Positions 1,155 through 61,300 of a stretch of DNA of 64,000 nt are shown here, one piece after another; the first letter of the stretch is position 1, and each line of letters begins with the position of its first letter. The notes beneath the pieces were generated by a model, which saw only the letters and a list, made by a program, of their open reading frames with translations, was not told the DNA's origin and did not search any database. Origin of the DNA: Lepidodermella squamata (Eukaryota > Animalia > Gastrotricha). The stretch spans positions 868,001 to 932,000 of the forward strand of contig JBLDXI010000031.1 in assembly GCA_047495785.1 (NCBI GenBank), given 5' to 3'. The position numbers and the translations under genes were made by a program.

Positions 1155-4100
1155 ATGAATCTGCGCATCATAGTCTATTTTTCAGCTGGCATAGTGGCAT
1201 CTTTTGCACGATTACCTGATCCAATTCTACTCCTGCCGCTCGACATGCAATCTGGATTCAAAGATTTGAGCGGGAAGTCTAAACAGCTAAGCGAACCAGC
1301 TCATCTGAGCATTAGCCAAGTGATGGCAGGTCCATTCGGTTATTTAGGAACTTCCGTTTCATTTTCAAGCAACGAACCGCTGATTTATAGCTTACCGTTG
1401 ATCGATAATTATCAGCCGTTGACCATTTCAATGTTTTTCTACTTCGACTCAACAGCTGGTGATGTCGACATTTTCACCTACGAGCGTCGAGATAATTATC
1501 TCTTTTTGTCTGTCAACGCTTCGGGAGGAAGGCTAATTTTGAGGAGTTTCGAGAACGGGAAAACAAGAAGCATTGCTGAGCTTCGCGAAGTCCGGCCTGC
1601 CAACTATTATTTCATCTCTCTCGCAATTGCATTCAACGGCGTGGTTCTGGTAACCATAGGTGTTGAGCCAAACTACTCTCTCGAAACTGCAATTCCTTTC
1701 GATGGTCATACTACCATTGGATCTGCAGAACCAAAACTGTACATCGGCGGTCTGAATGGAGCATCGAATCGCGAGCTTTTCTCTTGTGTTACAGCGTATC
1801 CTACGTGCATTTACGACCCATTAGTTACGAAACAAATTGTTGACTTATGCTTGCAGCAACACCGAGCCGCTTCTTCAACGCGCCAACGAGGTATGAATCT
1901 ATTGAGGAATGACAATGATAACTATTTAAGCCCTTCAAGTGAGCTTGTTTGCCCACCGATATACGGAGACCGAATGGCATGCTGATTTCGGCAAGCTTCA
2001 TAGCAGTGACCGAATAGATATCGTTGCTGACACCCGCACTACCGTTATTTTTGCTCAATGCGTATAAATATTCTGAAATTATCATTTTTAGGTCATGATA
2101 CTCATGCATCAAGCGGGCATTGCTACTGTGGCATATAGTTCCATCGTAACTGTTGAAGTTTCAAGCTATATCGGTATATGTAACGGCATGGATTGCGAAA
2201 AAGTCCTGATAGCCTTCATTGTTCCTATATTCTATGCTGTCAAATTATCGCAATCCGAAGAGGAATTCTGCCGCGAAATCGAGCAGAAACTACTTTCGGA
2301 AGAATTTCGTATTATATCAGTGATGTCGTTAGGTGAGGTTCGATTTCAAATGAGGAAGATGTCATTAATTTAACATTTTAAATAGATAAGCTGCCTTACA
2401 CCAGACCACTGAAGCTTTTGGCAGTTTGGCCATTCGACGACATAAGTGGAATCCGTGATCAGGGCCCTCTCAGACTTAGCGCAACTACTGACAATCGCTC
2501 GTTAAACTTCACTGATGGACCGTTCGAAGCTCCAAAAGCTGCGGTGCGATTAACCGAATCCCTGATGAAAATAGACCCTTTCAAAGTTTCGATCAATGAG
2601 GGTTACACTATCGCATTTTTCTTTTGGAAATCCTCTTCAGTGTATCCTAGAGACATCATGAACTTGCCCGACTGGTCGCTAAAAATTGGGATAACCAACG
2701 AGGGTATACTGTACGTTCAAAGCTATGAACAACTGTACAACCTTACTATGGCGGTTTCCGATGACGCTTGGTCTTTTCTCGGATTCGCGAGCAATTCATC
2801 GGGATTTTATGTCTACAACTCCTTCGGCTTGATATATTTTGCAACTGATACGAAATTCAAATCAACAACAATGTTTAGCATTGAGTTGACCGGGAATGGT
2901 TTGGACGGCATTTCTTGCTTATCAATTTATCATTTTCCGATGAGCTTTGACGATATTTCTCAAGTTCATGACGGCTGTAGGATGAAAATTATTCCACAGA
3001 TGAAATCTGGCCAGGCTTTGCCTGCAACATCTGAAATATCCAAGGGAAGTAGAGTCCCGTTCTTAACCCTCTAAGTCCGACTATGGGTTTTCGTCAATTG
3101 CAACTTCTCGGCGTAGGTGTGGATTGCTTATTAATTTTCGGCATAAAGTTTTTATACCACGGTTGAGCCCCTTACCTGAGCTTGCAGCACCCAGGCGGGC
3201 GCGTCCGCAACGTGCGATTACGCAACACAGTAATTAGGTAAATGTCCCTCGACTCTTAAACTCGTCGAAACACATGTGCCATTATGTGTGCACACATGAT
3301 GAGGGGCAATTTTTTGTCGCTCTGATTGCCATTCGAACACACGAACGTGTTTTGGAAACCAATTAACATGCGAAAACACATACGATCTTTTAATCACTGT
3401 TTTCAAGGCCCTAAATTGAGTTGCGCAGCTGTGCTTATAAAAATGTTGTCAGCAACATCTGGTGCTTACGCACTCTAGTGACAGCCATTTTTCACTTGAC
3501 AAAAAGTTATCAAGTGATTTTGGCGTACCAATTCCGATAAATTTGATTGCCGCCGATTCGATATCGATTTTCATCGGCTAAAAGCGCGTAGTTAGGGTGC
3601 GCGCCGGTAATGCTAGCCGGTTTGTCAAGGTGCCACTGATTTATCAACTAATCCTGGCCGAAAAATCGAGGTTTTGTCAACTTGCATCAAAATTTTCAGA
3701 GTTTTGTTACAAGTCGAAACACAAGTATGATGTAACAGGACTTTTCAAGGTGTTTGTTGCAAAACAATGGGTTCGCATGGCATTGCGAAACATGAGAAGA
3801 CAGCCATATAAAAGACCTGCAATAATCTATTTTATGGTTCCCCAAAATTGTTAACTTCGTTATCAAATGTCACTTGAAGACGACAGTAGCAGTGAAGAGG
3901 ACCTGGTGGAGATCGGCGAAACCTCGTCGGAATTGTCGTCTAACGATGAAGAGCTTGGCGTCACGCTCGACTCCGTCGTGCCGAAGACGAAATGGCGGAA
4001 AATGAACGAGGAGAGACCGTCTCACCAAGTTGAAAAATGCGCGTTGGTCAGCGGTCCATCGGAACTTTTCATCAAGAACCTCGTCGCAATGGAGCAAGGT

Positions 4101-7100
4101 AATTAATATTTATCAAATTTGTTGTACCGCTCACAATTTTTTTGTAGCCATGGAAAAAAACCGCAAAAAACTTGGCGGGAAATCGCGCTCTGATGGCAAT
4201 GCCGGCCCGGACGGGGGCGAAGAGAATGGTACCGAGGAGCAAGCTGTTGAAGAACCGAGCGAGGCAGGAAACGTCGTCGAAGAAGTCCAAGAAGCGCATG
4301 AGGAGGCCGAAGAAGAATTCCAAGATCTTGACGAAGAAGCCGATGATGAAGCGGAAGAAGACGAACAGCAATCATCAGTTTATTCTGACGGCGACTCAAG
4401 CGAATCAGAGAGCCGATACAAGTTGGTCAAGAGAAGAAGTCATCGGAAAGTGCTTCCTTTCTTCCTCCTCATGTTCCCGATCGTCAGCTTGCTGGTCGCT
4501 GAAACGAATAGGTACGCGGCACAGAACTACGATCCATCGAAGCCGCAATTCATCAACGTCACCGAGGAGGAGTTCTTCGGGTTTCTGGCGTGCGTCATTG
4601 GGATGGGTCTTGTCAACTTGCCGGCGCTTCATCAGTACTGGCAATCTTCGGATGCTTTGTTCTTTCAGCCGACGATTGCGAACATCATGAGTCGAGATCG
4701 GTTCAGAGAAATTCTGACTCACCTACACGCTGCCGACAACTCCAAAGCCTTGCCTCGAACAGACCCGAAATTCGACAAGATTTTCAAGGTCCGAGAAATG
4801 CTACAACAGCTGCAGGACAGCTGGCAAGCTAATTTCACGATAGGACCCGATGTAAATTGTTGTCTTTTTGTCTTTTTGCTCATCTTTATTGTCCTATTCT
4901 TGACAGATTGCTGTGGACGAGCAAATGATCGCCTTCAAAGGGCGCACCAGCCTCAAACAATTTATGCCAATGAAACCCGTCAAGCGAGGTCTAAAGATTT
5001 TCGCCCTGGCGCTATCACCTATCGGTTATATCTTTCGAGCACTGCTGTACAGCGGGAAAGGAGATGAAAGTACGTGATTTTTTTGTTTTGTTCTCTTGTC
5101 TACCCTCAATTTTCAAATAGCTGGCTCGGACGTTGCTGCTCAAGCAGGTCTCGCTGAGCGGATCGTTTTCAAGCTCTCAACTTCAATCTGGGGCTGCTGG
5201 CGCATTATCTTTATGGACAATTGGTTTTCTTCAGTTTCGCTCTACAACCGCCTTTTTGCTGAGAAAACTTACGCAGCCGGCACCGTTATCGCCAATCGAA
5301 CAGGTCTGGATCCGGCCGTTCCGATCAAACCCGCGTCAAAGCTACCGCGTGGAAGTTCGCAGTTCAAAGTTCAAGCTGACTTGCTTTATCAGTCGTGGCA
5401 AGACTCGAAAGTCGTCAACTTTCTCTCAACTCGACATTGCGGCACTGGTAACGACACGGTAAAGCGCAAGCAGAAAAACGGCAAGGTCGCTGAGTACTCT
5501 TGTCCCCCCGTTGTCGCTGACTATCAGAAGAACATGCGCGGCGTAGATGTCGCCGATCGCCTCCGCGAGTCGTACGATTGCACTTTGCCCGGGCGCAAGT
5601 GGCACCGCCTCGTGATTTTCTATGGCATCGAAACAGCAATCAACAACGCCCTGTTGGCTTTCAAGTCCACGGAAGATGATCCCGACTATCCTAGCTTGCT
5701 ATTCCGTCGTCGGCTATTCGACGAGTTGATACAAGCCTCTACCTCCGGCAATGTTACGCGCAAGGTCGGCAGAAAACGCAAGCTTTCTGAACAGCTCGAC
5801 CCGCTGGTCCCGAGCGACAAATGGCGAGAAGGCGGCCATTTTCCTGCTCACAATGGCTTCTATGAGTCGGTCGACGCTCGCGGTTACAAACGCGCAAAGC
5901 CGCGCGTGTGCGTCTACTGCAAGGTGGCGCCTGGCTGCACACCGCACATGGCGTCCTGGCACTGCGCTCAATGCGACGTTGGTCTTTGCTGTGAAAATTT
6001 CGGGAAATATGGTCCTCATGCCGGGATCTGACAAAATTACCGGTCCAAAATGACTGAACTTTTCATCCAAAACCTAAAAAATTTGCGTGCGATTCGCATA
6101 CATGTGTTTTCGAAAATTGCCAAATAAATAAAAAATTACGTGCTAAACCACATAGGTGTGTTCCCACAAATAAACATTTTTTACATCGTTTCGCTTGTGT
6201 TTCGACATGTAAAAACGACGTTTTTGGTCAAAATGAAAAAAATTGGTGAAAATATTTTAAGACTTGTGTTAACACAAGCACTTTTAAAAGTTACAATAGT
6301 AACACACATTTTTGTCATTTTTTTGCAACTTTCCAAAACACCAAGCGACTTACACATACACCAGCCGGACTTAGAGGGTTAAAACCGCTAATTTCTGCCA
6401 ACTCGAATTGTATGGCTGTAAAGTTGGACGGCCGACATTACATTTTGCCAGAATCATGCTTGAATTTATTCGAGCATCCACCAAGCAATGGAACCTTCGA
6501 AATCATAGGTGTGAAGGAGCAAGTGGCAATTCTTAGGCTAAATAACAGTGTTGAAATAGACCCTGAAACTTCGAATAACATTGCTCTGTTCACTAAATAC
6601 GTTGGAATGACGAATAACTGGTGGTATGACGTTATCGCTGTAGGATTCCGTGTTGAGCGCGAGCTTCAGAGGATTCAGGATGCGTATAACTACGAGTTCT
6701 TCGAGATTCATGGTAAAATTAACAGCGTCGATCCAGCGTGCGTATCGGAATCCTACATTTGCCTTGATTTGCCAAATAATGATGGTGAATCGCTTTTTAC
6801 TAGCCTGAACTTAGGTGCTGTTCTTTCTTTCACGGACATCCAATCCTATATAGATGGTGAAGCTAGATTGATAATGGTTAGCCTTATATAATGCGTAATG
6901 AAGCCTTATACCTTATATTGATTATATGCAGGGTGGAGTTTATTTGGGTGGAGAAAACGCCACAGCGAACTTCATTCGATTTTTCAACGTCGTGCAGCTA
7001 ACCAGTTGGATTCAAGAGACAGTAGCGTGTAGCGCCTTTCACGCAGCGAAATCAGAATGTCCCCAGTCGTTGGATCGGATACAATCTGAAACGTCATCGG

Positions 7101-15292: not shown

Positions 15293-15998
15293 GAATGAAA
15301 TCTAGTACACCTATATTTAACCCTGATTGTAACTCCGGGTCAGTGCCGTCAATTAGGATTATTTCCAGATTACATGACAAGTTCCAGCTGCTGAGGCTTA
15401 TACCGTAGTGACCTGTAGAGACTTAATCTCTAGATAGAACCATTGACGTTGCATTTTTATACAATTTTATATAGGTTTATTACACTTTGATAGATATAAA
15501 TGACACTTTGATGGCTATATAAATTACACTTAAAAGGATGAATCCTATTATGATATGATGTTGTTTTTTTTGTCGATGTTTTTTTGCCCTCGCTGCGCTG
15601 CTCTTCGAGAAAATACGCTATAGGCGATTATAGGCGATTGAGATCACCGCTAACCTCTTTGCTTCTATGCAAGGCAATTTGAGCTCCTTCATGGATTAGG
15701 GCTAATCGGTGGATGTTCTTCGTCAGATAAGACCTTCGTCGGATGAAAGAAGGAATAATTGATGGAGAAGGTCACGCCCTATTACTTGAATAGAATAATA
15801 TCGATTCTAGGCAATTTATTCGGTATGTAACCCTAATTCAGCTTTCATGTTGACTGTTGATTCGCTCAATGCAATTTCGGATATTTTGCATGGCTCAAAA
15901 GACTTCATTACCCAAGGCATTATTTTTATTGCATAACACACGGAAAAACATGCTCGTTGCAAAACAGACGGTTATCCGCAAATGAAACTCATGTAGCC

Positions 15999-18900
15999 TC
16001 ATTTATCAATTGGTAGCTCATTCAAGATTTTGCGAATCTCGTCTTTACGCTCGATAGATATCCAAGAATGCTCGCTGACAACATCATACGGTTTTTTTCC
16101 AAATTTATCTTTAACAGTTACCAAAGCGCTACATCTGTCTACCAGCAACTGCACGACAGAAGCGTGGCCATTCAATGCAGCCAAATGCAAAGGCGTTCGG
16201 CCTGTTCCATCAACAGCTTTCCCATCCGCTCCGTATTTGTCGATCAGCAACTGCACGAAAGAAGCGTGGCCATTCAATGCAGCCAAATGCAAAGGCGTAA
16301 GGCCGCCTTTATCAGCCGCTTTCGCATCCGCTCCGTATTTGTCGATCAGCAACTGCACGACTGGAGCGTCGCCATTCGATGCAGCCCAATGCAAAGGCGT
16401 TCGGCCTGTTCCATCAACAGCTTTCCCATCCGCTCCGTATTTGTCGATCAGCAACTGCACGACAGAAGCGTGGCCATACCATGCAGCCCAATGCAAAGGC
16501 GTAAGGCCGCCTTTATCAGCCGCTTTCGCATCCGCTCCGTATTTGTCGATCAGCAACTGCACGACAGAAGCGTGGCCATTCAATGCAGCCAAATGCAAAG
16601 GCGTAAGGCCGCCTTTATCAGCCGCTTTCGCATCCGCTCCGTATTTGTCGATCAGCAACTGCACGACAGAAGCGTGACCATTTTCTGCAGCCCAATGCAA
16701 AGGCGTAAGGCCGCCTTTATCAGCCGCTTTCGCATCCGCTCCGTATTTGTCGATCAGCAACTGCACGACTGGAGCGTGGCCATTCCATGCAGCCAAATGC
16801 AAAGGCGTTCGGCCTGTTCCATCAACAGCTTTCCCATCCGCTCCGTATTTGTCGATCAGCAACTGCACGACAGAAGCGTGGCCATTCAATGCAGCCAAAT
16901 CCAAAGGCGTAGGGCCGCCTTTATCAGCCGCTTTCGCATCCGCTCCGTATTTGTCGATCAGCAACTGCACGACTGGAGCGTGGCCATTCCATGCAGCCAA
17001 ATGCAAAGGCGTTCGGCCTGTTCCATCAACAGCTTTCCCATCCGCTCCGTATTTGTCGATCAGCAACTGCACGACAGAAGCGTGGCCATTCGATGCAGCC
17101 CAATGCAAAGGCGTTCGGCCTGTTCCATCAACAGCTTTCCCATCCGCTCCGTATTTGTCGATCAGCAACTGCACGACAGAAGCGTGGCCATTCAATGCAG
17201 CCAAATGCAAAGGCGTAAGGCCGCCTTTATCAGCCGCTTTCGCATCCGCTCCGTATTTGTCGATCAGCAACTGCACGACAGAAGCGTGGCCATTCAATGC
17301 AGCCAAATGCAAAGGCGTTCGGCCTGTTCCATCAACAGCTTTCCCATCCGCTCCGTATTTGTCGATCAGCAACTGCACGACAGAAGCGTGGCCATACCAT
17401 GCAGCCCAATGCAAAGGCGTAAGGCCGCCTTTATCAGCCGCTTTCGCATCCGCTCCGTATTTGTCGATCAGCAACTGCACGACTGGAGCGTGGCCATTCG
17501 ATGCAGCCCAATGCAAAGGCGTAAGGCCGCCTTTATCAGCCGCTTTCGCATCCGCTCCGTATTTGTCGATCAGCAACTGCACGACTGGAGCGTGGCCATT
17601 CGATGCAGCCCAATGCAAAGGCGTTCGGCCTGTTCCATCAACAGCTTTCCCATCCGCTCCGTATTTGTCGATCAGCAACTGCACGACAGAAGCGTGGCCA
17701 TTCAATGCAGCCAAATGCAAAGGCGTAAGGCCGCCTTTATCAGCCGCTTTCGCATCCGCTCCGTATTTGTCGATCAGCAACTGCACGACTGGAGCGTGGC
17801 CATTCGATGCAGCCCAATGCAAAGGCGTTCGGCCTGTTCCATCAACAGCTTTCCCATCCGCTCCGTATTTGTCGATCAGCAACTGCACGACAGAAGCGTG
17901 GCCATTCAATGCAGCCAAATGCAAAGGCGTAAGGCCGCCTTTATCAGCCGCTTTCGCATCCGCTCCGTATTTGTCGATCAGCAACTTCACGACTGGAGCG
18001 TGGCCATTCGATGCAGCCCAATGCAAAGGCGTTCGGCCTGTTCCATCAACAGCTTTCCCATCCGCTCCGTATTTGTCGATCAGCAACTGCACGACAGAAG
18101 CGTGGCCATTCAATGCAGCCAAATGCAAAGGCGTAAGGCCGCCTTTATCAGCCGCTTTCGCATCCGCTCCGTATTTGTCGATCAGCAACTGCACGACTGG
18201 AGCGTGGCCATTCGATGCAGCCCAATGCAAAGGCGTTCGAACGGTCTTTTCTGCAGCTACTGTGATAAGTCTTTCAGCTGTTGGTCTGTTCCGAGGTTGG
18301 TCATTGGGGTCACTCATCATAGAGATAACTACATCACTTGTCTTCTTCGAATATCCGTTTAGGTCTGGCAACTGCCTGCAATTGGAGTTTTGACGTTCTC
18401 TGAAGCAGAAACCGCATAGCATTACTTACCGTGACTTTTTAAGCGTGTTGTGATGCTCAAGTGGGTTGGTTACGGCGTTCTCACCGTTGAACTGTCTCAA
18501 GAAACATTTAATCATGAAGCAAGAAATGTTCATAATTTATTCTCACCGGTTTACGGCCACTAGCTGCTTCGTATAGAGTCACTCCAAGTGACCAAATATC
18601 GCAAGGCTTCGTGTATTCCAAGCGAATGAAAACAGCAGGCGATGCGTATTCGTAAGTTTTCAAGACCGCAGAAACATATTGTCGCTTAATACTTGAAATT
18701 ACTGGTTAACAACATCAGTTAGATTATCGGAGATGAACATACGCAATCAAGTTTTTGGTAAATCCAAATCCGCCAAGTTTAAGAAGCTTCCTATCCTCAC
18801 TCAAGTAGATGTTTTTCGGCGTAATGTCTCGATGAATGATATCCTTGTCATGGAGGAGCTTGACCGCAAACAAAAGCTGAAATATCCAGTCGACGAACTG

Positions 18901-19389
18901 ATCTTCGGGAATTCTCCGGGTTGCACGTATATAGTCGTTCAATGTGCCATGAGGGCAATATTCCATGACCAAGTAATACATCTCACAACCTGCCTTATTC
19001 GAATCAGTTCCCTGGTATTCCTCTGTAAGTGAATAGTGACTGATTTCACACCGAATTTCGTTGAATCGGCTCACCTCTAAACGCGCCGAAAACTTCCACA
19101 AGGAATAGATCATGAATAGTCTCTAGTTTAGCGTGCTGCGATACAGGATCGGAATTCAAAACAAAATTCTGAAACACATTAAAGTAACCTCTTCCAAGCT
19201 GCTTTTAACGATGGTATCAACATATTTCTCGCCAAAGCGTTCTTCCTGTCGCATAGCGGTTATATTCAGTTCTTTGACAGCAAATTCTTCATCGCCGCAT
19301 CGAGCGAGAAATACTTCGCCGAATTCTCCAGCAGGCCCAAGGCTTCTGACAAAGGTAAATTCGCTGGATGAAGTAAATTTAGCGGGCAT
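15999..19389 (-). CDS. Ser/Thr-type (NEK-like) pseudokinase fused to 21 ankyrin repeats; kinase domain split over several short-intron exons
   Basis: Spliced kinase: LGPAGEFGEV, FAVK, YLVMEYC, HRDITPKN, KLGGFG, YASPA, DIWSLG, RPTA; final long exon carries TPLH..A..GH repeats. Confidence 0.9.
16098..18239 (-). repeat. Coding tandem array of 21 x 102-bp ankyrin repeat units
   Basis: Near-identical 102-bp DNA units, each encoding 34 aa. Confidence 0.95.
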
Positions 19390-42743: not shown

Positions 42744-42965
42744 GGATGAACGACAAGCTCCTTAAATAAAATATGAATCAGTCAAACTTTTTACTTTTTC
42801 GATTTTTGAACAATTATTCAGCATATTATAAGGCATAGTTGCGTAGAATTATGAACAGTGATGATGTAGAGATCGACAATGATGAGGAGATTTTCTCGAA
42901 AATATTACAACAAAAATACAATAATGATTGTCCTAGATCTGCATAAAACAAAGAAATACTGTAAC

Positions 42966-44811
42966 CTATCTCTCTCCATAGTTGATCGAATCGAGATCTG
43001 AGCCGTTTTTTGATTGGGTACCTGCTGGTGAAGATGAGTTTCGATCTAGAGGAGACGAGCAACGTGCAAGTAAATTTCGCTCGAAAATCTTCGGCAACCG
43101 GTCTAGAATTGGATTGTTGTAGCAATATCTCTGCATGTACTGATCCCGAGTAATCGCTTTGTCTAAAATCAAAGAATAAAAAGACGCATCTCTGTAAATT
43201 TAATCCATTACCTAATATATAAGCCATCCCATCTATTCGAATCGTCACACCTCTTCGGCCAGACATACCGCCAAAAAGTAGGAAACTACCTGGAGATGCT
43301 CCTTCAGATCTGTCTTTTGAAAGAGACATTCCAGGTTTGACTCCGCTTGAAACAGTTGTAGTCGAACTTGCTGCTCCATCGTTGTGGTAATCCGAGGCGA
43401 GTTGGCCAATTTCAGTATCACCCATAGGAGTAGGAATCACGGACGAACTAACTGCGACGATATTTCTCGTAATTTCGTTCACCAGAACCACGTGGCCTGT
43501 AACTTGAGGCTGGTGCGATGAGTTTAACCTAGTTAGCTGGACATAACCCAGGTAATACTCATCGCGGAAAGGTAGGAACAAAGATGCGTCTCTAACTGCA
43601 AGTTGGGCTCCTCCTAGGTTGAAAGGTCGTGGTAACTGAGGCGCGACTGTAGTATCAAGCCTGCATTGAAGATACCTATCCGAACTTATCACCTGAGATT
43701 TTCCATTCACGAAAAAACACGCCAGAGTTTGAAGGGGTAGTACACTGAATACGAAATTGAGTTTTTGCTCACGTTTGCCTAACGTGACTACAACCCATGG
43801 TGTCCAAGTTGGCGCGATGAATTTCCAATTTTTCGAAACAAAAGCTGGTAACTTGATGACAACCCTCACATTTCGAGTTACGTCCCATAAATACGGGTAG
43901 TGCACTGTATCAGTTACAGCATCGACCGCTAATAAGGAGACATAAGGCTCGCCATTCAGTGTGAAAGCAGTTGGATGGGCTGGGTATAATTTAGACGTAG
44001 CAGCTTCCGGTATGCCAAGAAGCCTTCCGGAGTTTTCAACAGGATGCAGGGATGAAACGTCAAGCATAGTCGTGTAGACAAAACGATTCGCGGCGTTGTG
44101 TTCGTTTTCAGTCTGGTTCCTCGAGTCCTCATTAATCTCTCCGTCATAAGGCGACTGGAAAATATTTGAACGAGTGATTTGCAATGAGATCGCGCAGAAA
44201 GCCACGTTTTCGGATGAAGAACTCTTCGTCCCTACAAAGGAATACTCCATTGGCGCTACTAAATGAGCGCATGAGACCTTTTTGAGGCGGATTGATACCA
44301 ACAGTTGAGCTGCATCGTCGATCATTTGCCTAACATGGCGAGTGACGTAAGGCCCTAAAGAGCCAGCTTCTGATAAACCAATTATCGCATCCTGTTCATC
44401 CGGAGGTCCTGAAACACCTTGGGAACAGTCATCCGTGAAACTAGGTATCATTGCTAGGCAAACCAGATGGCGAGTTGCGTTTTCGAATGCGTAGTTCGGT
44501 ATGCCTCTAGGTAGGTTTGAGCGGTAAATAGGCGCGTTTTGTGACGAAGCACCGTCGAATAAATCGATAAGGGCTGATGATACAACGAAAACGATAAGGA
44601 TAACACCGGTACAACCGACCATAGCAATCACGCAGGGCGAGTCGGTTCGAGTCTGGCGGACTCGCATCATCCACTGCTGGCGGTAGGCTGCATCTGAGTC
44701 GTCGTAGGGTACTGTTGTAGGCTGAGGGCATGTTGCGGTCACATCTCGCGGAGTGAGTGGCGTAGATCGGAAGAACCTTCGATGGTTTTTATGGACGTTC
44801 AGAGTCGGCAT
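42966..44811 (-). CDS. Type II membrane protein, possibly a degenerate five-bladed beta-propeller / beta-1,2-mannosyltransferase (GT91)-like protein
   Basis: TM near the N-terminus; SKNWKF...FVFSVLPLQTLAC...C resembles EKNW.PF...FVYS..P..vL.C; a 49-bp intron at 43211-43163 gives a different C-terminus from the raw ORF. Confidence 0.55.
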
Positions 44812-46630
44812 AGTTTCTAAATTAAATGCGTCTAAAAACTGTACAAATATAGTGATTGAGGGCACTTGAAAGCAATCTATTTTTAGATGGATCGGAATTT
44901 ATTTATTCATTTATAACACCCAAGAGAAGGAAACTCGAAATAGTTTGAAATCGAACGGAAACATATGATTGCAGGACAGTTACAACGGACAAAGGCAAAT
45001 GCGTGCGGGATAGAAAAATTTGGAAAAATTCCAACTTAGCAAAAGATGAATCATGCACTTCGACCCAGCATGGCATGCTTGCTGAGAACTCAGATGGAAA
45101 ATAGGGAGCGAGTGGGAAGACAGAACTGGTTAGGGTAAGGAAAATCGACAAAAGAGTCCCTCCTTTGGTCTATGACTGAGTTCACCTTGCGGACCTCTTG
45201 AACAGGCAGGGAAGATCCCTACCATCCTAGCGTTACTTCGCTCTCTGCCTAAATCCTAACACTAGTGAGAGAATTCGAGAATCGTGAAGAATTCGCGTTG
45301 ATAAATCCGGCTGTGGAAGACTCTTTCAAGTACAGAAGGAAGTATTCAAATTTGGCAAATGCTCTCATCAATCCAATAATGTCCCATTCACAATAATCTA
45401 CCACAGAAAACTAGGTAAAGGCAGTCCCAATTCCAGGTAACCGAATAGACTTGTTGACGTTCGGCGTCTGAAATCGCCGGTGAAATGCGATGCGTGACGC
45501 ACAGGTGCAGCGGCTATTTTGTTATCACAACGAGAAATATCATAGCACGCGCGCATTTTTACGCGGATTAGCTGCCCAATCACTTGCGTGAGCGGCTACT
45601 CGAGTGAAATAACACAATTGCGCACGCGTATATTTAGCAATAAATAGCTCTCTCAAGCCGTCGTCCGTCGTTGGTATCATCGCGACAACAAAACATATGC
45701 ATCTTGTTTTTTAGCTGCAAAAATGCTAAATTGTTGCGCGATTATTTTTCGCGCGCACCACATACTCTCGGCATCATTAATATAATATTATGCCACTGAA
45801 GCGCTCGCATGCGCATGTGAGTGATATTTATCCGATAATATACCTTCGTTGATGATTAAGGCGGTCCCACTGGGAGATAAGCGCGTGCGTTTTGATTCAA
45901 TAAAATTTTGTGGCGACTAAATAGCCGCTCGTTGCGTTATTAGCATCTGCCGCGAATTGATAGGCCTCTATTAACAAAATTATTATTATTTTATTTCAGC
46001 TGCCCGCTGTGCGATTTCACAAGAGCGTTATTAGTAGTGACGCGCCGTGCCGTGGCGCTCTATATAATAAATTAGCGCGGGGATGAAATGCTGAAAATAA
46101 TATTTTCACATTTTATGCGCATAACAGTAGTAGTTGGTCAGCTTATTTTTTTCTTGAGATTTTCTCGCACTTCATTTCAAGTATTGACTTAACGAGCAAT
46201 ATCGCACGCAGTGCAAGTTATGATTATTAATTCCGGTGTGGGCTGCTGAAAACTTGAATTAAAAATTATAATTGCTTGAGTAAATAAGGGATTATGTATA
46301 TGAAAAAATGATGAAGCGGAAGTTTGTTTACTTCCAGCGACGTTAGGACAATGTCTGGCGTTGCATTGTTGGCGGGTGGTTACGATGGAAATTCTTGAAC
46401 TTTGAGTCTGAGGGAATAGATCGAACTGTACTTAATTCTGCAAAACAACGGTGGGAAATAAGGGTCGAAAGCCTAAACCGCTTTATTAATCAAGTCAATC
46501 ATAGCAAGCTCGTAAAATTCTTTGGTGACTGACCTTTGATCTTACGATACTAATGATGAAAAGCAAAAGCCACATCTTGAATAATATCATGGTAAATCGC
46601 TGCTACTTCCTGTGGGAATATTGGTTAAAA

Positions 46631-49690: not shown

Positions 49691-50911
49691 TTATGCTATT
49701 ACAGGATAGCTAGGGAAGCTGAGTATGCCGCACAAGTTCGAACCTCGAGCCATGCGAATATAACCCTGCTCGCCCCACCCAGTTCCCCAGCTGTTCTTGA
49801 CTAGCCAATAGTTCTTCCCAGTTGCAGCATCCGTTCCGTAGCCAACAACCAAAACACCATGATTCACACTAGTCGTGCAAGCTGCATCGTAATACACCCC
49901 ACTCGAGTAGTAAATGAATGACTTGAGACTAGCATCGATAGCAACAGAAACCGGTCCAGTTTGAAGGGCCTGCATCAACGCCGTTTCACTGTTTGCCTGA
50001 ACAGTGAAAATCGACGAAACCGGGGCGAATCTTGCAGAAGTAGCGTTGTTGAATTTGCAACTTTTACTGCTAGTCGCGGTGTATGGGTAAGCAGTGTCTG
50101 TATTGAGGCCACCAACAGACTTAGCATAACTAAACGCGTCATCCATCCAGCCCCCATCGCAAGCTTGGTTTCCGAATGACCAAGAGCAGTCCATGAGATT
50201 TTGCTGGGATAGCGAAACTAAATTGCCGTACTTAATCTTATAGCGACCTTCGAGGGCTCCTGCAGCTGTGAAACTCCAGCACGAGCCGCAGTTTCCCTGA
50301 TCTTTGATTGAAGATACAGCTCCGCTTGTTCTCCAGTCCAAACTAGTACCAGAATTTGTAGTAGTGGTTGTCGCTTTCGCCGTAGTAGTAGTGGTCGTTG
50401 CAACTTTCGTCGTAGTTGTCGTAGTACTAGCCTTCGGTGTGGTAGTAGTAGTGGTTGTCGCTTTAGTTGTAGTCGTGGTTGAAGTAGGTTTCGTGGTAGT
50501 TTTTGTGGTAGTAGTCGTTGCTTTAGTTGTAGTAGTAGTCTTGAAATTGAAAGTCGCTCCGACTAAGGTTTTCTCAACAGGCACTTTCAGGCCGAGTCGA
50601 GTCCTGATTTCATCTTCAGTTCGATCTGCAAATTGATTCAACCCAAGCTTGAAAGTTTCGTTGCCTTTCTTGTTATGATCGTCGATGAAGCTCTGGCGCT
50701 GTTTGAAAATATCGTTTCTTTGCCTTTCCTCAGATGTATCCTTGTATGAAGGCTTGTTCTTTCCCTTCCAATTATCCCAATCTGAATCAGCGGGAGCAGC
50801 CACTAGAAAAGGAATAAGTAGTGAAGAAAAAATATTGGATATTACTGGCTTACCACTAAGAGAAATCAGGCCGGCTGATAGAATGAAGAATCCAGAACTT
50901 TTGTAAAACAT
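49691..50911 (-). CDS. Cathepsin L-like papain-family cysteine protease A with Thr/Lys-rich linker
   Basis: I29 prodomain (ERQRNDIF...LGLNQFAD), QGNCGSCW, NHG, KNSWG; short in-frame intron after the signal peptide. Confidence 0.95.
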   Translation of the reverse strand: MFYKSSGFFILSAGLISLSGKPVISNIFSSLLIPFLVAAPADSDWDNWKGKNKPSYKDTSEERQRNDIFKQRQSFIDDHNKKGNETFKLGLNQFADRTEDEIRTRLGLKVPVEKTLVGATFNFKTTTTTKATTTTTKTTTKPTSTTTTTKATTTTTTTPKASTTTTTTKVATTTTTTAKATTTTTNSGTSLDWRTSGAVSSIKDQGNCGSCWSFTAAGALEGRYKIKYGNLVSLSQQNLMDCSWSFGNQACDGGWMDDAFSYAKSVGGLNTDTAYPYTATSSKSCKFNNATSARFAPVSSIFTVQANSETALMQALQTGPVSVAIDASLKSFIYYSSGVYYDAACTTSVNHGVLVVGYGTDAATGKNYWLVKNSWGTGWGEQGYIRMARGSNLCGILSFPSYPVIA

Positions 50912-51641: not shown

Positions 51642-52772
51642 CTAAGCAATCACAGGGTAGCTGGCATAGCTGAGGATGGCGCATAGATTGGAACCACGAG
51701 CCATGCGGATGTAACCGTTCTCGCCCCACCACGCACCCCAGCTGTTCTTAACCAGCCAATAATTCTGCCCAGTCGCAGCATCAGTCCCATAGCCAACAAC
51801 CAGAACGCCATGGTTGATATCCGTCGTACAAGCTGCGTCATTATAGACGCCACCAGAGTAGTACCAAAACGACTCCTGGCCAGCGTCGATTGCAACAGAG
51901 ACCGGTCCACTTTGAAGCGCCTGCATCAACCCAGCTTCTGTCGCTTGGACGTTCACGATAGATGACACAGACGCGAATCTCGCCGAAGTGGCGTTGCTGA
52001 ACAAACAAGTTTGACTGCTGACGGCTTTATAAGGATAAGCAGCGCCTGTATTGATTCCTCCGACCGATTTCGCATAATTGAACGCCGAATTCATCCAACC
52101 ACCGTCGCACGCATAGTTACCGAACGACCACGAGCAATCCATGAGATTTTGCTCGGAAAGGGATACCAAATTTCCGTACTTGAGCTTGTAACGGCCTTCC
52201 AGAGCTCCGGTGGCCGAAAACGCCCAGCACGAACCGCAGGAACCTTGATCTTTCACGCCGGAGACCACTCCACTAGTTCGCCAGTCCAAGAACGCGCCAG
52301 GGGCTGCGGTTGTTGTAGCTTTTGTGGTCGTGGTCGTGGCCTTTGTTGTCGTTGTGGTTACTTTGGTTGTTGTAGTCGTTTTGGGTTTCGTAGTTGTTGT
52401 AGTAGCTTTTTTGGTTGTCCTAGCGCCCACGAGCAAGTTGTCCCCAGGCAGCCTCAGACCAAGACGCAAACGGATTTCGTCGTCAGATTTATCAGCAAAG
52501 CGATTTAGGCCAAGTTTGAAGGTTGCGGATTCTTTCGCGTTGTGCTCTTCCACCAAATTCTTCCGGCGATTGAAGTTGTCGGCTCGAGTTCGTTCTTCGT
52601 TCGGGTTCGGGTAGGAAACCTTATTCGAAGCCTTCCAATTGTTGAATTCGCCATCGGCTGGAGCAGAGTCTGTAATAGAATGGAACTTATGATTAAGCTG
52701 AAGCGAGCAAACTATTCGCAACGTACCACATAAGGCAATGAAGCTCGATGCAATTAAGACAATTGTGAACAT
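51642..52772 (-). CDS. Cathepsin L-like cysteine protease B (tandem paralogue) with Thr/Lys-rich linker
   Basis: LGLNRFAD, QGSCGSCW, NHG, KNSWG; same intron position as copy A. Confidence 0.95.
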   Translation of the reverse strand: MFTIVLIASSFIALCGTLRIVCSLQLNHKFHSITDSAPADGEFNNWKASNKVSYPNPNEERTRADNFNRRKNLVEEHNAKESATFKLGLNRFADKSDDEIRLRLGLRLPGDNLLVGARTTKKATTTTTKPKTTTTTKVTTTTTKATTTTTKATTTAAPGAFLDWRTSGVVSGVKDQGSCGSCWAFSATGALEGRYKLKYGNLVSLSEQNLMDCSWSFGNYACDGGWMNSAFNYAKSVGGINTGAAYPYKAVSSQTCLFSNATSARFASVSSIVNVQATEAGLMQALQSGPVSVAIDAGQESFWYYSGGVYNDAACTTDINHGVLVVGYGTDAATGQNYWLVKNSWGAWWGENGYIRMARGSNLCAILSYASYPVIA

Positions 52773-53374
52773 TTTAGAAGCAAAAGGAGTCACTTTGGGA
52801 ATTGTTTTGAAGTTTGAAGGAGGATGATGAACTTCTCTCCCAAAGCGTAATCATTATATAGCCGAAATGTTGGCAACTCCTATGTGTTTACATCGTTTTG
52901 GCTGTTCGATTTAAGCCAAGAAAACATGTTTTCGCCGTTCGTCGATGACGCAGGTATAGCAGGCCTTTGACATAATCCAGAATTTGTTTCTGTTATTCCG
53001 CTTTCATACATTTCAACATTAAAATTCTGCCGTTACGGTAACAACTATGACGTAGACGTGTGCTTGAAACAAAAAACTGTTACCACTTTTTTACTGACGC
53101 ACGTTTTCAATGCTGTATTATCCGTCTATTAAACACTTGTTTACACCTTGAAGCATTTTTTGTCTTGAGGAAATTCGTGGGAAAAACATCAGCTATCCCT
53201 TGGCAGGTTACGAATCCAAATGATTTCTGTTGACCTTGCCTATTTGGAAAATATGACCTCAATAGGTTTGAGACACATTGATTCTTAGCCATTTTATTGC
53301 TTCAAATAAATAGTTTCATAATTTTCACTGGTAATAAATTATTATGACGTTTTCAAGTTGAAGAGCTTGTATTA

Positions 53375-58338: not shown

Positions 58339-61300
58339 TTAACACGAAAATGACGCTGCTCCATGCCTATCTAGGGTGCCATCATTCGGCTTGCATGGCG
58401 GCTTGACGACGTTAAGCGTCGGACCGTCTCCTAAATATCAAGCAATTATGATTATAGCGAGGAAAACCCAAAATCATATCATACTTGGATTGTTTGCGCT
58501 GAAAAGGGTGGCAATATCGCCCTGTATCGAAACTTTGATCATTTCACCACCGCTGTTATAACCCCCTGATTGGGCCGTTCTCAGGTTCTCAGCCGTCGGG
58601 AGGCCCATCCATGCGTTGAACACAATTTTCGAATCGAGCCCCGGCGCGTCAATATTTGCCGCGATATTGCCGCCAAGCGAATGGCCAGTTGCGACAATTT
58701 TATAGCCGGCAGGTTTGTAAGCAGCTACAACATCTTTGACCAGCTGGTTCGCTTTGCCCTGCGTAAATGGTGTAACGCCAGCAAAGCCAGTAATAGTATC
58801 CTTTACAACGTCCAGCAAGTTGTCCGTACCACGGAAAACCACATTTGCCGTCTTTGTCGCTGTATCGATGACTACAATCGCTTCTCCGTTCGGCATAACG
58901 TTGCTCAGCTTCGTATCAAGTTTCTCATTGGGCTGAAGTTGACCGGCAACCTCTTTCAGGTCCTTAATATAAGGTAGTTGGACCAAGCGACCAGTATTGT
59001 CGATTCTGCCTTTAGTTTGAGTGTCCAACGTATTGTAGGCACGAGCATTATTCTGCGTTAGAATGCTTTGAATCGTGCCGAGAGGTACGTTTCGAAAACT
59101 GAAACCACTTGATACTTCGTTGGATTCAAGGACTGCGTTCGCATCGCTGTTCAAAGGACCGTTTACTGATGCATTTTGTCCGATTTGATTCAGCAAAGGC
59201 CCGGACCCTATGACTGAGCCGCGCGCCACGCCGCTGTAATCTGACGAACGAAAACTTCCTGAAACAGGCTTCGCGGGATCCTTCCAGCCAGGTAGCCCAA
59301 TGCTTGCTGAATCTCCTGAACTACTAGCCACTACGTTATGACTGTTGATCTGGTCGACTGTGAAAGCTGGACCTTCAAATTGAACAACAGCGCCGGTAAG
59401 ATTCAATGTTCCAATGTGCAAGCCACGTGCTCCCCCTGAGCCGATTACGAACGAGCTTTGTGAGTTCAGTCGAGTGCCGCTGTTTTCAGAGACACCGCCA
59501 GAAACAGCCCCGCTTGTTGAGAAACCAAAAGATCGCGAAGTTGAGTCAAACGAACCGAGCAGTGTTTCCATGCTTACGTTTCGAAGATTCCCGGATACTG
59601 ATTCAGCATAAATATTGAACCCACGAGCTTCGAAAGTGTCAACGTTGACGAAGCCAACAGATTTGCGAAAGATACCCAGCGCATTATCGACAACAGAAGA
59701 CTTCGACGAGGAACTGGAAGCGGAACCGGATGCTCCCAAGATGCCGCCCGGGCCTAATAGGACTGAAGCCTGAAAGCTAGACGCCGATTGGGAAGCGCCG
59801 AGATGCGCCCCTTCAATGACAAATCGTCTAACATTGAAAACAGCGTCGTCTGCAACAATCGTAGCAGCGTTAAGCCACGAAAAACTATCAGCTATAACTT
59901 CAAGTTCTCCAACAACAATCTTCATTGTTCTAGCCGATGTTTGCCAGTCAATTGAAACATCGCTTTTCCCATATCCAACGCTAACTGAGGGAGTCGGATT
60001 TCGCAACGTTGCGATTGCTGAGTACGAAGCTAATGCAGTTTCGGTCAGCTTGTCACTATTGGCCCATGTCTGAGCGTTATTGATTAGAGAACCGACTATC
60101 GGTATGCTGACGAGAAGACCGCGGTCATGCTGCTCAAAGTGATGCTGCAAGATTCGGTCTGCAATCACAACTTCAGGGGCACTGATGATAAGCTTTCCAG
60201 CGATAGCAATCGACGTTCCGATCATTGAAATTTTTCCATTCTCTGATCTGATGATCGAAATTGCGTTAGAGTCGCCGCATCTGATGACTGAAGGAACCGA
60301 GCCCACCGGAACAACAGATGAGGACCTTGACGAGCCGCCGAAAAAGGACTCCCTTTCCTTTTCCTCGCGAACTAATACTACAATGTCACGAAAGTTCGCG
60401 TCGTTGTTACTGAAAAGCTGCAAGCCCTGTTGACCATTGAGCACTGATGCGGTCGATGCCATTGAAAGCGACTGCACGCGAATCAGGCCTTTGTAAGAGC
60501 GAAAGCAAAACACAGAAGCTGTAAGCTAAGTATTGCCGTTTATTAGCAAAGAAACAGTTAATATTACAATTAAAATAACATAAGCGAAACAAGGGTTTAT
60601 ATATTACAATGGAATGTTCTAGAATCGGAAGTTTCTGGAAGGTTCGAGAACTTGCTGGGTTCTGGCAGGTTCGAGAACGCGGAAGTTTCTGGAAACTTCT
60701 CGACCGCCGATACTACAGGGTCGCGTGGTCCTGACAGCCTTGTTCGGAAGTGACATAACTTCTCTCGACATGCGTCTCATAAAAATGGTTTGTTTTATCG
60801 TTTCCCCAGAAGTCTGTTTTGTCCCAACGTTCAGTTAACCACTCAAAGGAGTCGGCGGCAAACACCGCCGCACCACGTGGACATTTTATGATAACGTCGT
60901 AGCGAGCTCGGATATCGCCACACCATACGTTGACACCACCATTGGTGGACTCAATATACAAGTCGAGCTTCCGAGAATTGTCTTCTGTCCAATTCCCATT
61001 ACGATTCAATATGCGAGCTTCGTAACTGAAACCGTCCGCCGCTCGCAAACTGGCTCGATTATAGGCATATGGTTTTGCGTAACGCGTTACGTCACGTTTT
61101 CGCCGCTTCCCGGCGAAGATTTTTAAGGATTCAATTTTGACGTCTCCTGAAGCCCCAAGGACGATCTGCTTAGCCGCAATTGACGAGGCCCCAACAGATA
61201 TCGTTGAGGTTTCGCTCGTGACTATAACAGACGCGCCTTGAGCCGACACACTACTGGCACCGTTGATCAGCGTTGCCATGGTAGCTCCCAGGCCAATTTC

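What the first reader, a model, noticed from the sequence alone, without database searches (positions are those of the whole stretch)
15999..19389. Natural 'DARPin library': 21 near-identical ankyrin repeats varying almost only at binding-surface positions
Seen: the 102-bp units have an essentially invariant scaffold (VVQLLIDKYGAD, same codons). Variation is combinatorial at a few sites: H[W/L]AA[SN/LN/WY/WN/EN]G, HA[P/S], and the hairpin [AKAADKGGL / GKAVDGTGR]. These cassettes reassort independently along the array, which points to intra-array recombination. Established: the helix-1 and hairpin positions form the ankyrin binding surface randomised in DARPins, and fungal NLRs use highly conserved repeats that reshuffle to change specificity. 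Inference: a recombination-diversified intracellular sensor with a (pseudo)kinase output.
Basis: partly seen in the sequence, partly recalled or inferred. Interest (0 to 1): 0.8.

Follow-up and report, generated by a model that had tools for sequence, protein, structure and literature searches.

The report
Dead kinase with shuffled ankyrin array
This is a real, spliced gene of an unidentified small-intron animal that joins a catalytically dead kinase to 21 almost identical ankyrin repeats differing mainly on their likely binding face, a pattern known from fungal immune receptors; what it binds is unknown.

Summary
Window 16101-18242 (minus strand) carries 21 tandem 102-bp (34-residue) ankyrin units in one exon. 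Twenty are 91.6% identical in DNA, and scaffold codons 16-27 use the same codons throughout. The gene has six exons (19389-15999). Contigs of one public run carry four of the five intron-removed joints, including the kinase-to-ankyrin one.

The kinase domain lacks the catalytic-loop Lys, the DFG Asp and the APE Glu. Seven paralogues share the first two losses, and the domain evolves under purifying selection (omega about 0.2).

Recurrent variation sits at nine residue positions. Seven of them match positions randomised in designed ankyrin binders. "Independent reassortment" is overstated:
- there are two parental unit types (A and B) plus eight mosaic units;
- linkage between sites is strong;
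- units 1-7 are a fresh ABABABA amplification.

Whole-unit dN/dS is about 0.9, so positive selection is not shown. The signal is that variable codons are old (dS 0.54) while the scaffold is homogenised (dS 0.06). Outer-helix positions that vary freely in paralogues are invariant here.

Repeat-number polymorphism and any sensor or immune role are untested. The scan has noted similar kinase-ankyrin genes elsewhere in this genome. I found no close relative of the kinase in public protein libraries.

The parts
19189..19389 (-). Exon 1 (67 codons). It starts at the ATG at 19389 and encodes the glycine-rich loop (GPAGEFGEV) and the beta-3 lysine (FAVKEL) of the kinase fold.
   Evidence: Open frame. 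Weak alignment to the Aurora and NEK1 N-lobes. A loose end in run X2 at 19137 carries the last bases of exon 1. No Pfam hit on its own.
19075..19135 (-). Exon 2 (61 nt).
   Evidence: Open frame. The joint 19022/19075 is seen in run X2, with GT..AG ends on the minus strand.
18743..19022 (-). Exon 3: the kinase catalytic core, with HRDITPKN (catalytic-loop Lys replaced by Thr) and GGFG (DFG Asp replaced by Gly).
   Evidence: Pfam Pkinase 1.4e-18. The alignment to NEK1 shows both substitutions. An X2 contig covers the whole exon with 0 differences.
18547..18691 (-). Exon 4: activation segment and subdomain IX (YASPAV in place of the APE motif; DIWSLG kept).
   Evidence: Pfam Pkinase 1.5e-07. Alignment to STK38. 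Joints 18691/18743 and 18491/18547 seen in X2.
18430..18491 (-). Exon 5 (62 nt).
   Evidence: Open frame. Joints on both sides seen in X2.
15999..18375 (-). Exon 6: end of the kinase C-lobe, the whole ankyrin array, a 30-residue tail and the stop codon.
   Evidence: ORF. An X2 contig joins exon 5 to this exon and runs on to 18210, inside the first ankyrin unit.
16203..18242 (-). Twenty near-identical 34-residue ankyrin units, mean 91.6% nt identity.
   Evidence: Pfam Ank with 21 stretches, 8.5e-195.
17529..18242 (-). Units 1-7: a perfect ABABABA block. Three 204-bp A-B dimers are identical except for one base. This is the most recent amplification.
   Evidence: 100% identity of the dimers.
16101..16202 (-). 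Unit 21: a degenerate terminal (capping) unit. It is homologous to the last unit of paralogues L022 and L023.
16092..16098 (-). A7 homopolymer in the tail. Contigs of runs X1 and X2 carry one extra base here, which would end the protein 30 residues early.

Best explanation
Shown: this is an intact six-exon gene. Contigs of a run that is probably RNA carry its intron-removed joints. The gene encodes a protein of about 1,041 residues that starts directly with a protein-kinase fold. That fold has lost three catalytic residues (HRDITPKN, DFG to GFG, APE to SPA). It is followed by 21 tandem 34-residue ankyrin repeats in one exon and a short tail.

Shown: the array evolves in concert. The scaffold is identical down to the codons. 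The last event amplified a 204-bp A-B dimer. Two old sets of variants (A and B), plus a few further alleles (WY, WN, EN), survive only at helix-1 and hairpin positions and at position 15. Exchange between units has recombined them into mosaic units.

Inferred: unequal crossing-over and gene conversion within the array keep the framework uniform, while the variants on the target-binding face are retained, probably by selection. The array would then present a long concave surface made of a small alphabet of different binding patches. The dead kinase, conserved under purifying selection, would act as a scaffold, an allosteric module or a decoy rather than as an enzyme.

Guess only: that the protein is an intracellular recognition (immune-type) sensor.
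For: - Gene model and transcription. Four GT..AG joints are present in run X2, including the exon 5 to exon 6 joint that links kinase and ankyrin parts. No joints are seen in run X1.
- Dead kinase.
- A clade of 8 loci in this genome shares HRDITPxN plus GG[FL]G, while more distant paralogues keep HRDIKPSN plus GDFG.
- The kinase exon against paralogues gives dS 0.49-0.61 and dN 0.10-0.13, so the dead domain is under constraint.
- Concerted evolution: scaffold dS is 0.037 (0.06 for A against B), against dS 0.26 (0.54 for A against B) in the nine variable codons. No other locus in the genome matches the array DNA above 85%, so homogenisation happens within the locus.
- Recombination: four-gamete pairs position 7/position 15 and position 7/hairpin.
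- Binding face: all six DARPin positions and the ANK-N5C position 10 are among the nine recurrently polymorphic positions (P = 6e-5 for the six).
- Structure: helix 1 is positions 4-10 and helix 2 is positions 14-22 in the model.
- Independent array: a second homogenised array with a different scaffold (L027, 24 units) varies at 6 of the same positions (P = 0.0014).
- Not simply relaxed constraint: outer-face helix-2 positions 14, 18, 22 and 23 have high entropy in 36 divergent paralogue units but show no recurrent variation here.
- One nucleotide (column 29) carries all three sense alleles (TCG, TTG, TGG) at 7, 8 and 4 copies.
Against: - dN/dS over the whole unit is about 0.93 and only about 1.4-1.6 in the variable codons. 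Recurrent and singleton polymorphisms both show about 3:1 nonsynonymous to synonymous, which is the neutral ratio.
- The variable positions are also the most variable ones in ordinary, non-homogenised paralogue arrays: 8 of the top 10 by entropy. Their location alone does not prove selection for diversity.
- Linkage is strong, and a third of the array is a very young duplication.
- No data exist on repeat number or order in other individuals, on ligands, or on expression conditions.
- Two public runs carry a one-base-longer homopolymer that would truncate the tail. The gene may be decaying in some lineages, or the tail may be dispensable.
- Position 15 (start of helix 2) and position 28 are not designed-binder positions.
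Confidence: 0.55

Rival explanations
1. Neutral by-product. An ancestral pair of diverged neighbouring units (A and B) was amplified recently by unequal crossing-over. Out-of-register exchanges then made the mosaics. The A/B differences lie on the binding face only because those are the least constrained ankyrin positions. Dense mismatch patches such as the hairpin resist gene conversion. Diversity itself is not selected.
For: - Two parental haplotypes make up 12 of 20 units, and units 1-7 are a perfect ABABABA block.
- The nonsynonymous to synonymous ratio is about 3:1 in both recurrent and singleton changes, and whole-unit dN/dS is 0.93.
- Synonymous differences sit inside the same variable codons, and the hairpin cassette carries 9 differences in 26 nt in complete linkage.
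- The variable positions are the highest-entropy positions in divergent paralogue arrays.
Against: - The isolated single-base differences at positions 7, 10 and 11 are not dense patches, yet they persist at intermediate frequency.
- One site carries three alleles.
- The equally unconstrained outer-helix positions 14, 18, 22 and 23 are fully homogenised.
- An independent homogenised array (L027) keeps variation at the same positions, with 7 or more hairpin alleles.
Confidence: 0.3
2. The array is a structural or localisation module, not a variable sensor. It could be a long solenoid used for anchoring, scaffolding or elasticity, as proposed for the ankyrin tails of Giardia Nek pseudokinases or for 24-29-repeat ankyrin domains. 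On this reading the A/B alternation is a structural two-repeat period.
For: - Giardia has 198 Neks, 71% of them catalytically dead and 67% followed by ankyrin arrays. Deleting a repeat changed the localisation of one of them (PMC3218828).
- The array lengths here (21 units, and 24 in L027) are close to the 24 repeats of ankyrin.
- There is a 204-bp super-period.
Against: - The ABAB order breaks down after unit 7.
- A spring or anchor role gives no reason to retain several alleles on the concave face.
- The repeats here are of the TPLH type, not the Giardia TALM class (PMC3218828).
Confidence: 0.15
3. Assembly artefact: the repeat number or order was produced by mis-assembly of a shorter or different array.
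For: - Short-read contigs of runs X1 and X2 cannot span the array and leave several bins without depth.
- Three A-B dimers are identical.
Against: - The longest exactly periodic stretch is 273 nt, and 14 different unit sequences anchor the array.
- The assembly has 151 contigs for 121 Mb, which suggests long reads.
- The frame stays open across all 21 units.
- 71% of the sampled 31-mers of the stretch are present in an independent run.
Confidence: 0.05

Closest known systems
Highly internally conserved (HiC) ANK, TPR and WD repeats of fungal NOD-like receptors (Dyrka et al. 2014, PMC4986451; Podospora het-d/het-e, PMC12222747)
   Same: The repeats are at least 85% identical to one another, are 33-34 residues long and evolve in concert. 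Variation is confined to inner-helix and hairpin positions on the concave face. The units look shuffled between positions.
   Different: There is no NACHT or NB-ARC domain; the partner domain is a dead kinase. The organism is an intron-rich animal-like eukaryote, not a fungus. Repeat-number polymorphism and positive selection, both shown in Podospora, are not shown here. That paper found such repeats in only 0.8% of metazoan repeat proteins.
Giardia Nek-ankyrin expansion (Manning et al. 2011, PMC3218828)
   Same: An N-terminal Nek-like kinase domain, mostly catalytically dead, is followed by a variable ankyrin array (1-26 repeats). The gene family turns over quickly.
   Different: The Giardia repeats are divergent in sequence and belong to the TALM class, and are not homogenised. 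The kinase here is only weakly assignable to Nek. There is no shared ancestry: none of the 150 nearest public proteins combines this kinase type with ankyrin repeats.
Designed ankyrin repeat proteins (DARPins; ANK-N5C library, PMC4308713)
   Same: A consensus-like constant framework (47-55% identical to designed proteins; rmsd 1.3-1.7 A to the closest). Variation falls at framework positions 2, 3, 5, 10, 13, 14 and 33.
   Different: This is a natural 34-residue unit with one extra residue at the end of helix 2. Only 2-5 alleles occur per position and they are linked into cassettes, so it is not a random library. Two further variable positions (18 and 30 in DARPin numbering) are not randomised in the designs.
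Concerted evolution of metazoan domain repeats (Schuler and Bornberg-Bauer 2016, PMC5100051)
   Same: Volatile repeats with high purity and signs of recombination, described as rare and proposed to be linked to host-parasite arms races.
   Different: That survey does not describe kinase-ankyrin genes or variation restricted to the binding face.

Membership tests
Ankyrin repeat (Pfam PF00023 / PF12796) | Matches the family profile above the curated cut-off | tested here: met
   Ank 8.5e-195 with 21 stretches; Ank_2 2.7e-198.
Ankyrin repeat (Pfam PF00023 / PF12796) | Helix-turn-helix plus hairpin solenoid fold | tested here: met
   The AlphaFold2 model of units 5-10 has pLDDT 95.9 and two helices per unit. 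Foldseek gives TM 0.85-0.96 to ankyrin and DARPin structures.
Eukaryotic protein kinase (PF00069) | Kinase-fold profile match | tested here: met
   Exon 3 scores 1.4e-18 (67.7 bits, above the 31.7-bit cut-off). Exon 4 scores 1.5e-07 (31.5 bits, just under the cut-off, for a 48-residue piece). Exons were searched one by one.
Catalytically active protein kinase | Catalytic-loop Lys of HRDxKxxN, Mg-binding Asp of DFG, and Glu of APE | tested here: not met
   The sequence has HRDITPKN, GGFG and SPA. An independent X2 contig gives the same sequence for exon 3. The beta-3 Lys and the HRD Asp are kept.
NEK (NIMA-related) kinase family | Closest similarity or phylogenetic placement within the Neks | tested here: inconclusive
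   The best solved relative of exon 3 is NEK1 (3.6e-14), but GCN2 and ULK1 score almost the same. The best hits of exon 4 are STK38 and CLK. No full-domain tree was made.
Fungal-type NLR with HiC repeats | Central NOD (NACHT or NB-ARC) domain | tested here: not met
   Pfam finds only kinase and ankyrin domains in exons 3, 4 and 6, and nothing in exon 1. Exons 2 and 5 (about 20 codons each) were not scanned. The 1,041-residue model leaves no room for a NOD domain.
Fungal-type NLR with HiC repeats | Repeats at least 85% identical over at least 100 residues | tested here: met
   Mean pairwise identity is 85.0% in protein and 91.6% in DNA over 680 residues. This sits on the threshold.
Fungal-type NLR with HiC repeats | Repeat-number polymorphism between individuals | not testable with these tools
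   Only short contigs of two runs were available, and none spans the array.
Fungal-type NLR with HiC repeats | Positive diversifying selection at binding-face positions | tested here: inconclusive
   Variable codons give dN 0.37 and dS 0.26. A against B gives 0.88 and 0.54. There are too few sites for a firm test.
Giardia Nek-ankyrin (TALM-ankyrin) proteins | TALM motif at the start of the repeat | tested here: not met
   All units start with TPLH or TPLD. The motif definition is from PMC3218828.

The most novel reading that the evidence does not exclude
This gene is one member of a lineage-specific animal family in which kinase or pseudokinase domains are coupled to self-homogenising ankyrin arrays. 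The binding faces of these arrays would be diversified by recombination within the array. That would be a germline 'natural DARPin' recognition system, convergent with the repeat-shuffling immune receptors of fungi, with a kinase fold in place of a NOD domain.
Probability: 0.2. Interest if true: 0.8.

Novelty: new variant of a known kind. Interest (0 to 1): 0.55.

Why it matters
Homogenised repeats with hypervariable binding positions are the hallmark of fungal non-self receptors and are reported as rare in animals. An animal family that uses the same evolutionary device on an ankyrin scaffold, coupled to a conserved dead kinase, would be a new candidate class of intracellular recognition proteins. 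It would also be a natural test of how far a DARPin-like framework can be re-targeted with a few cassette alleles. Even on the neutral reading, the locus is a clean and datable example of concerted evolution inside a coding exon: the scaffold dS is 0.06, against 0.5 in the variable codons and in the paralogous kinase exons.

Tried and rejected
- **Organism identity.** A word search with the intronless cathepsin L gene of the window gave no hit above 56% identity. The ankyrin ORF found only generic ankyrin proteins at 55% or less, and did not find itself. The organism stays unidentified, and the run names were coded.
- **Orthologues.** A word search limited to the 46 residues of the kinase C-lobe found nothing. 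This is a weak test, because only one candidate shared words with the query.
- **Exhaustive search with exon 3.** No protein reached E of 1e-30 or better. The best single-stretch identity was 48%. None of the top 150 has ankyrin repeats or the HRDITP plus GFG combination.
- **Other individuals in metagenomes.** The invariant 36-nt scaffold has no exact match in metagenome contigs.
- **Same scaffold on other effector domains.** No locus in the genome matches the A-B dimer above 85%. The nearest belongs to the kinase paralogue on contig C10.
- **Array polymorphism from runs X1 and X2.** The contigs are too short, and many fit several places in the array. An 11-mismatch contig at unit 1/2 cannot be assigned to an allele or a paralogue.
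- **Plus-strand ORFs through the array** (16068-18362 and 16747-18393). I rejected these as by-products of the periodicity, because the spliced transcript is on the minus strand.
- **Joint 19028/19189 in X2.** It has non-canonical ends and only a 21-nt side. I did not take it as an isoform.
- **Joined coding sequence.** Exons were searched one by one by reference, and the reading frame across joints was checked by hand (exon lengths 201+61+280+145+62+2377 = 3126 = 3 x 1042).
Full report
**1. Observation**

Tandem Repeats Finder reports a 102-bp array of 20.6 copies and a 204-bp super-period of 10.3 copies (93% matches) at 16136-18239. The region lies in an 807-codon minus-strand ORF, 15999-18422. 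Anchoring on TPLH gives 21 units of exactly 34 residues, at 18242-16101.

- Units 1-20 are on average 91.6% identical in DNA and 85.0% in protein. Unit 21 is a degenerate terminal unit.
- Only 24 of 102 nucleotide columns vary.
- Codons 16-27 (VVQLLIDKYGAD) use a single codon each, apart from two single-unit changes.

**2. The gene**

The minus strand carries a six-exon gene:

| Exon | Coordinates |
|---|---|
| 1 | 19389-19189 |
| 2 | 19135-19075 |
| 3 | 19022-18743 |
| 4 | 18691-18547 |
| 5 | 18491-18430 |
| 6 | 18375-15999 |

Introns are 51-55 nt. The exon lengths sum to 3126 nt, which is 1,041 codons plus a stop.

Exons were searched one by one by reference.

Contigs of public run X2 carry four intron-removed joints with GT..AG ends on the minus strand. 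One of them joins exon 5 to the ankyrin exon and runs into the first unit. A loose end matches the exon 1/exon 2 joint. Run X1 shows no joints. The tool only guesses that X2 is RNA, but joints in X2 and none in X1 fit that guess. So kinase and ankyrin parts very probably sit on one transcript. The protein starts directly with the kinase fold.

**3. The kinase is dead but conserved**

Exons 3 and 4 match Pfam Pkinase. Aligned to NEK1, the catalytic loop reads HRDITPKN (Lys replaced by Thr) and the DFG motif reads GFG. The APE motif reads SPA. An X2 contig reproduces exon 3 without any difference, so these are not assembly errors.

In the same genome, eight loci share HRDITPxN plus GG[FL]G. Six are on contig C31, one on C10 and one on C2. 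The next paralogues, at 53-56% identity, keep HRDIKPSN plus GDFG.

Against the two closest paralogues, the kinase exon gives dS 0.49-0.61 and dN 0.10-0.13. The dead domain is therefore old and under purifying selection.

"NEK-like" is only weakly supported. NEK1 is the best solved relative of exon 3 by a narrow margin, and exon 4 prefers STK38 and CLK.

**4. Anatomy of the variation**

Recurrent variation falls into four blocks:
- position 7: W or L;
- positions 10-11: SN, LN, WY, WN or EN;
- position 15: P or S;
- a hairpin cassette covering positions 28-34 plus position 2 of the next unit: AKAADKG-GL or GKAVDGT-GR, with nine nucleotide differences in complete linkage.

Two parental unit types dominate. 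Type A (W-SN-P-A hairpin) and type B (L-LN-S-G hairpin) each occur six times. Eight units are mosaics.

Units 1-7 are a perfect ABABABA block, and three 204-bp dimers are identical but for one base. This is a very recent amplification.

Four-gamete pairs (position 7 with position 15; position 7 with the hairpin) require exchange between units. Linkage is nevertheless strong:
- P15 always goes with the A hairpin;
- SN always goes with W;
- LN always goes with L.

"Independent reassortment" is therefore overstated.

Six amino-acid changes confined to one unit (L2P, H6D, H13D, V16F, Q18K, and the EN variant) and one silent singleton look like random recent mutations.

**5. Where the variable residues sit**

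An AlphaFold2 model of units 5-10 has pLDDT 95.9. Helix 1 spans positions 4-10 and helix 2 spans positions 14-22. The model superposes on designed ankyrin proteins with TM 0.85-0.96.

The alignment to DARPins maps our positions 33, 34, 2, 10, 11 and 31 to DARPin positions 2, 3, 5, 13, 14 and 33. That these six are the randomised DARPin positions is my own recollection of the original design. It fits the positions that differ between the internal repeats of the DARPin aligned. Our extra residue is D22.

The ANK-N5C library randomised positions 2, 3, 5, 10 and 13, with 33 close by, describing them as one continuous binding surface on the beta-turn and helix 1 (PMC4308713). If its numbering is the DARPin numbering, as positions 2, 3, 5 and 33 suggest, then position 10 is our W/L at position 7.

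So seven of the nine recurrently variable positions are designed-binder positions. The probability that all six DARPin positions fall among nine variable positions of 34 is 6e-5. Positions 15 and 28 are the exceptions.

A second homogenised array in the same pseudokinase clade (L027, contig C2) has 24 units and a different scaffold, VVNLLIRDFGAKADDKD. It varies at positions 33, 34, 1, 2, 10, 11, 15 and 18, with seven or more hairpin alleles. It shares six variable positions with ours (P = 0.0014).

**6. Is diversity selected?**

Nei-Gojobori counts:

| Comparison | dN | dS |
|---|---|---|
| All units, whole unit | 0.088 | 0.095 |
| All units, nine variable codons | 0.37 | 0.26 |
| All units, scaffold | 0.007 | 0.037 |
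| Type A against type B, variable codons | 0.88 | 0.54 |
| Type A against type B, scaffold | 0 | 0.06 |

- Whole-unit dN/dS is about 0.93, so there is no classical signal of positive selection.
- The signal is a patchwork of ages. The variable codons are as diverged as the paralogous kinase exons, while the scaffold between them has been homogenised.
- The only synonymous A/B difference outside the nine variable codons (codon 30) lies inside the hairpin cassette. The Fisher test for clustering of synonymous differences gives P = 0.06, or 0.007 if codon 30 is counted with the cassette, which is a post hoc choice.

In 36 units of non-homogenised paralogue arrays, the highest-entropy positions are 10, 33, 34, 15, 11, 2, 22, 14, 7 and 31. 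The location of the variation alone could therefore reflect low constraint.

Three points favour retention of binding-face diversity over pure neutrality:
- The equally free outer-face positions of helix 2 (14, 18, 22, 23) show no recurrent variation in this array.
- Isolated single-base differences persist at intermediate frequencies, at positions 7, 10 and 11.
- One site carries all three sense alleles.

They do not prove it.

**7. Relatives and literature**

- No other locus in the genome matches the array DNA above 85%, so homogenisation is within the locus.
- Word searches found only generic ankyrin proteins.
- The exhaustive search with exon 3 found nothing at E of 1e-30 or better. None of the 150 nearest proteins has ankyrin repeats or the HRDITP/GFG state.
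[quoted passage not shown] These show concerted evolution, repeat-number polymorphism and positive selection on the concave face. The same paper found such repeats in only 0.8% of metazoan repeat proteins (PMC4986451).
- Concerted evolution of metazoan repeats is described as rare and possibly linked to arms races (PMC5100051).
- Giardia combines mostly dead Neks with ankyrin arrays, but with divergent TALM-type repeats (PMC3218828).
- The scan's own notes list several further kinase-ankyrin genes with homogenised arrays in this genome. I treat them as leads. My own check covers only the paralogues fetched here.

**8. Limits**

- Runs X1 and X2 are short contigs that cannot span the array, so repeat-number or order polymorphism, the key prediction, is untested.
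- Both runs differ from the assembly at about 1% of flanking sites.
- Both carry an extra base in the A7 run at 16092-16098. That would replace the last 30 residues by two and a stop. The assembly's frame is the one conserved in paralogues.
- The organism was not identified.

**9. Verdict**

The evolutionary description is well supported: a dead kinase joined to a concertedly evolving ankyrin array, with variation almost confined to the binding face and shuffled between units. Whether selection maintains the diversity remains open. So does the reading of the protein as a sensor.

Noticed in passing
window 16092-16098 (minus-strand A7 run): Contigs of both public runs (X1, X2) carry one extra base in this homopolymer, together with three nearby substitutions. 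This would end the protein 30 residues early (GKKTV-stop). The assembly's frame is the one shared with paralogues.
   Followed up: partly
window 15617-15998: Runs X1 and X2 each hold a contig that joins 15617 to 15998 with 9 other letters between. This is a roughly 380-bp indel directly after the stop codon. X1 also holds a contig identical to the assembly across this stretch.
   Followed up: no
G000:C36:1335300-1335592 (locus L028): An isolated copy of the last ankyrin unit and the C-terminal tail (77-89% DNA identity) lies near a contig end, with no kinase exon found beside it. It is probably a gene relic.
   Followed up: partly
G000:C2:1421405-1424441 (locus L027:406-3441, minus strand): A second homogenised ankyrin array of 24 units on a different scaffold lies downstream of a pseudokinase exon of the same clade. 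One hairpin allele, KLFGM, is one residue longer than the others.
   Followed up: partly
G000:C31:1134852-1138616 (locus L021:1352-5116, minus strand): This paralogue has a 1,255-codon ORF of about 34 divergent ankyrin units. It includes a large internal duplication: a block with a hydrophobic insert (ITYSWTSLFYFIIAS...) occurs twice.
   Followed up: no
window 4030-6031 (+): Two adjacent ORFs match the two halves of a piggyBac-type transposase (DDE_Tnp_1_7). This is a transposase gene split by a stop or a frameshift.
   Followed up: no
window 49691-50911 and 51642-52793 (-): Two tandem, apparently intronless cathepsin L-like genes (I29 propeptide plus Peptidase_C1). The best public relatives of the first are only 56% identical or less (the second was not searched).
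   Followed up: partly
window 42826-44865 and 58474-60513 (-): Two ORFs of identical length (679 codons) with no Pfam match, and an 886-codon ORF at 60713-63373, also with no match. They may be a duplicated unknown gene or a mobile element.
   Followed up: no
window 16068-18362 and 16747-18393 (+): Long antisense ORFs run through the array. They are by-products of the stop-free periodic sequence, not genes.
   Followed up: yes
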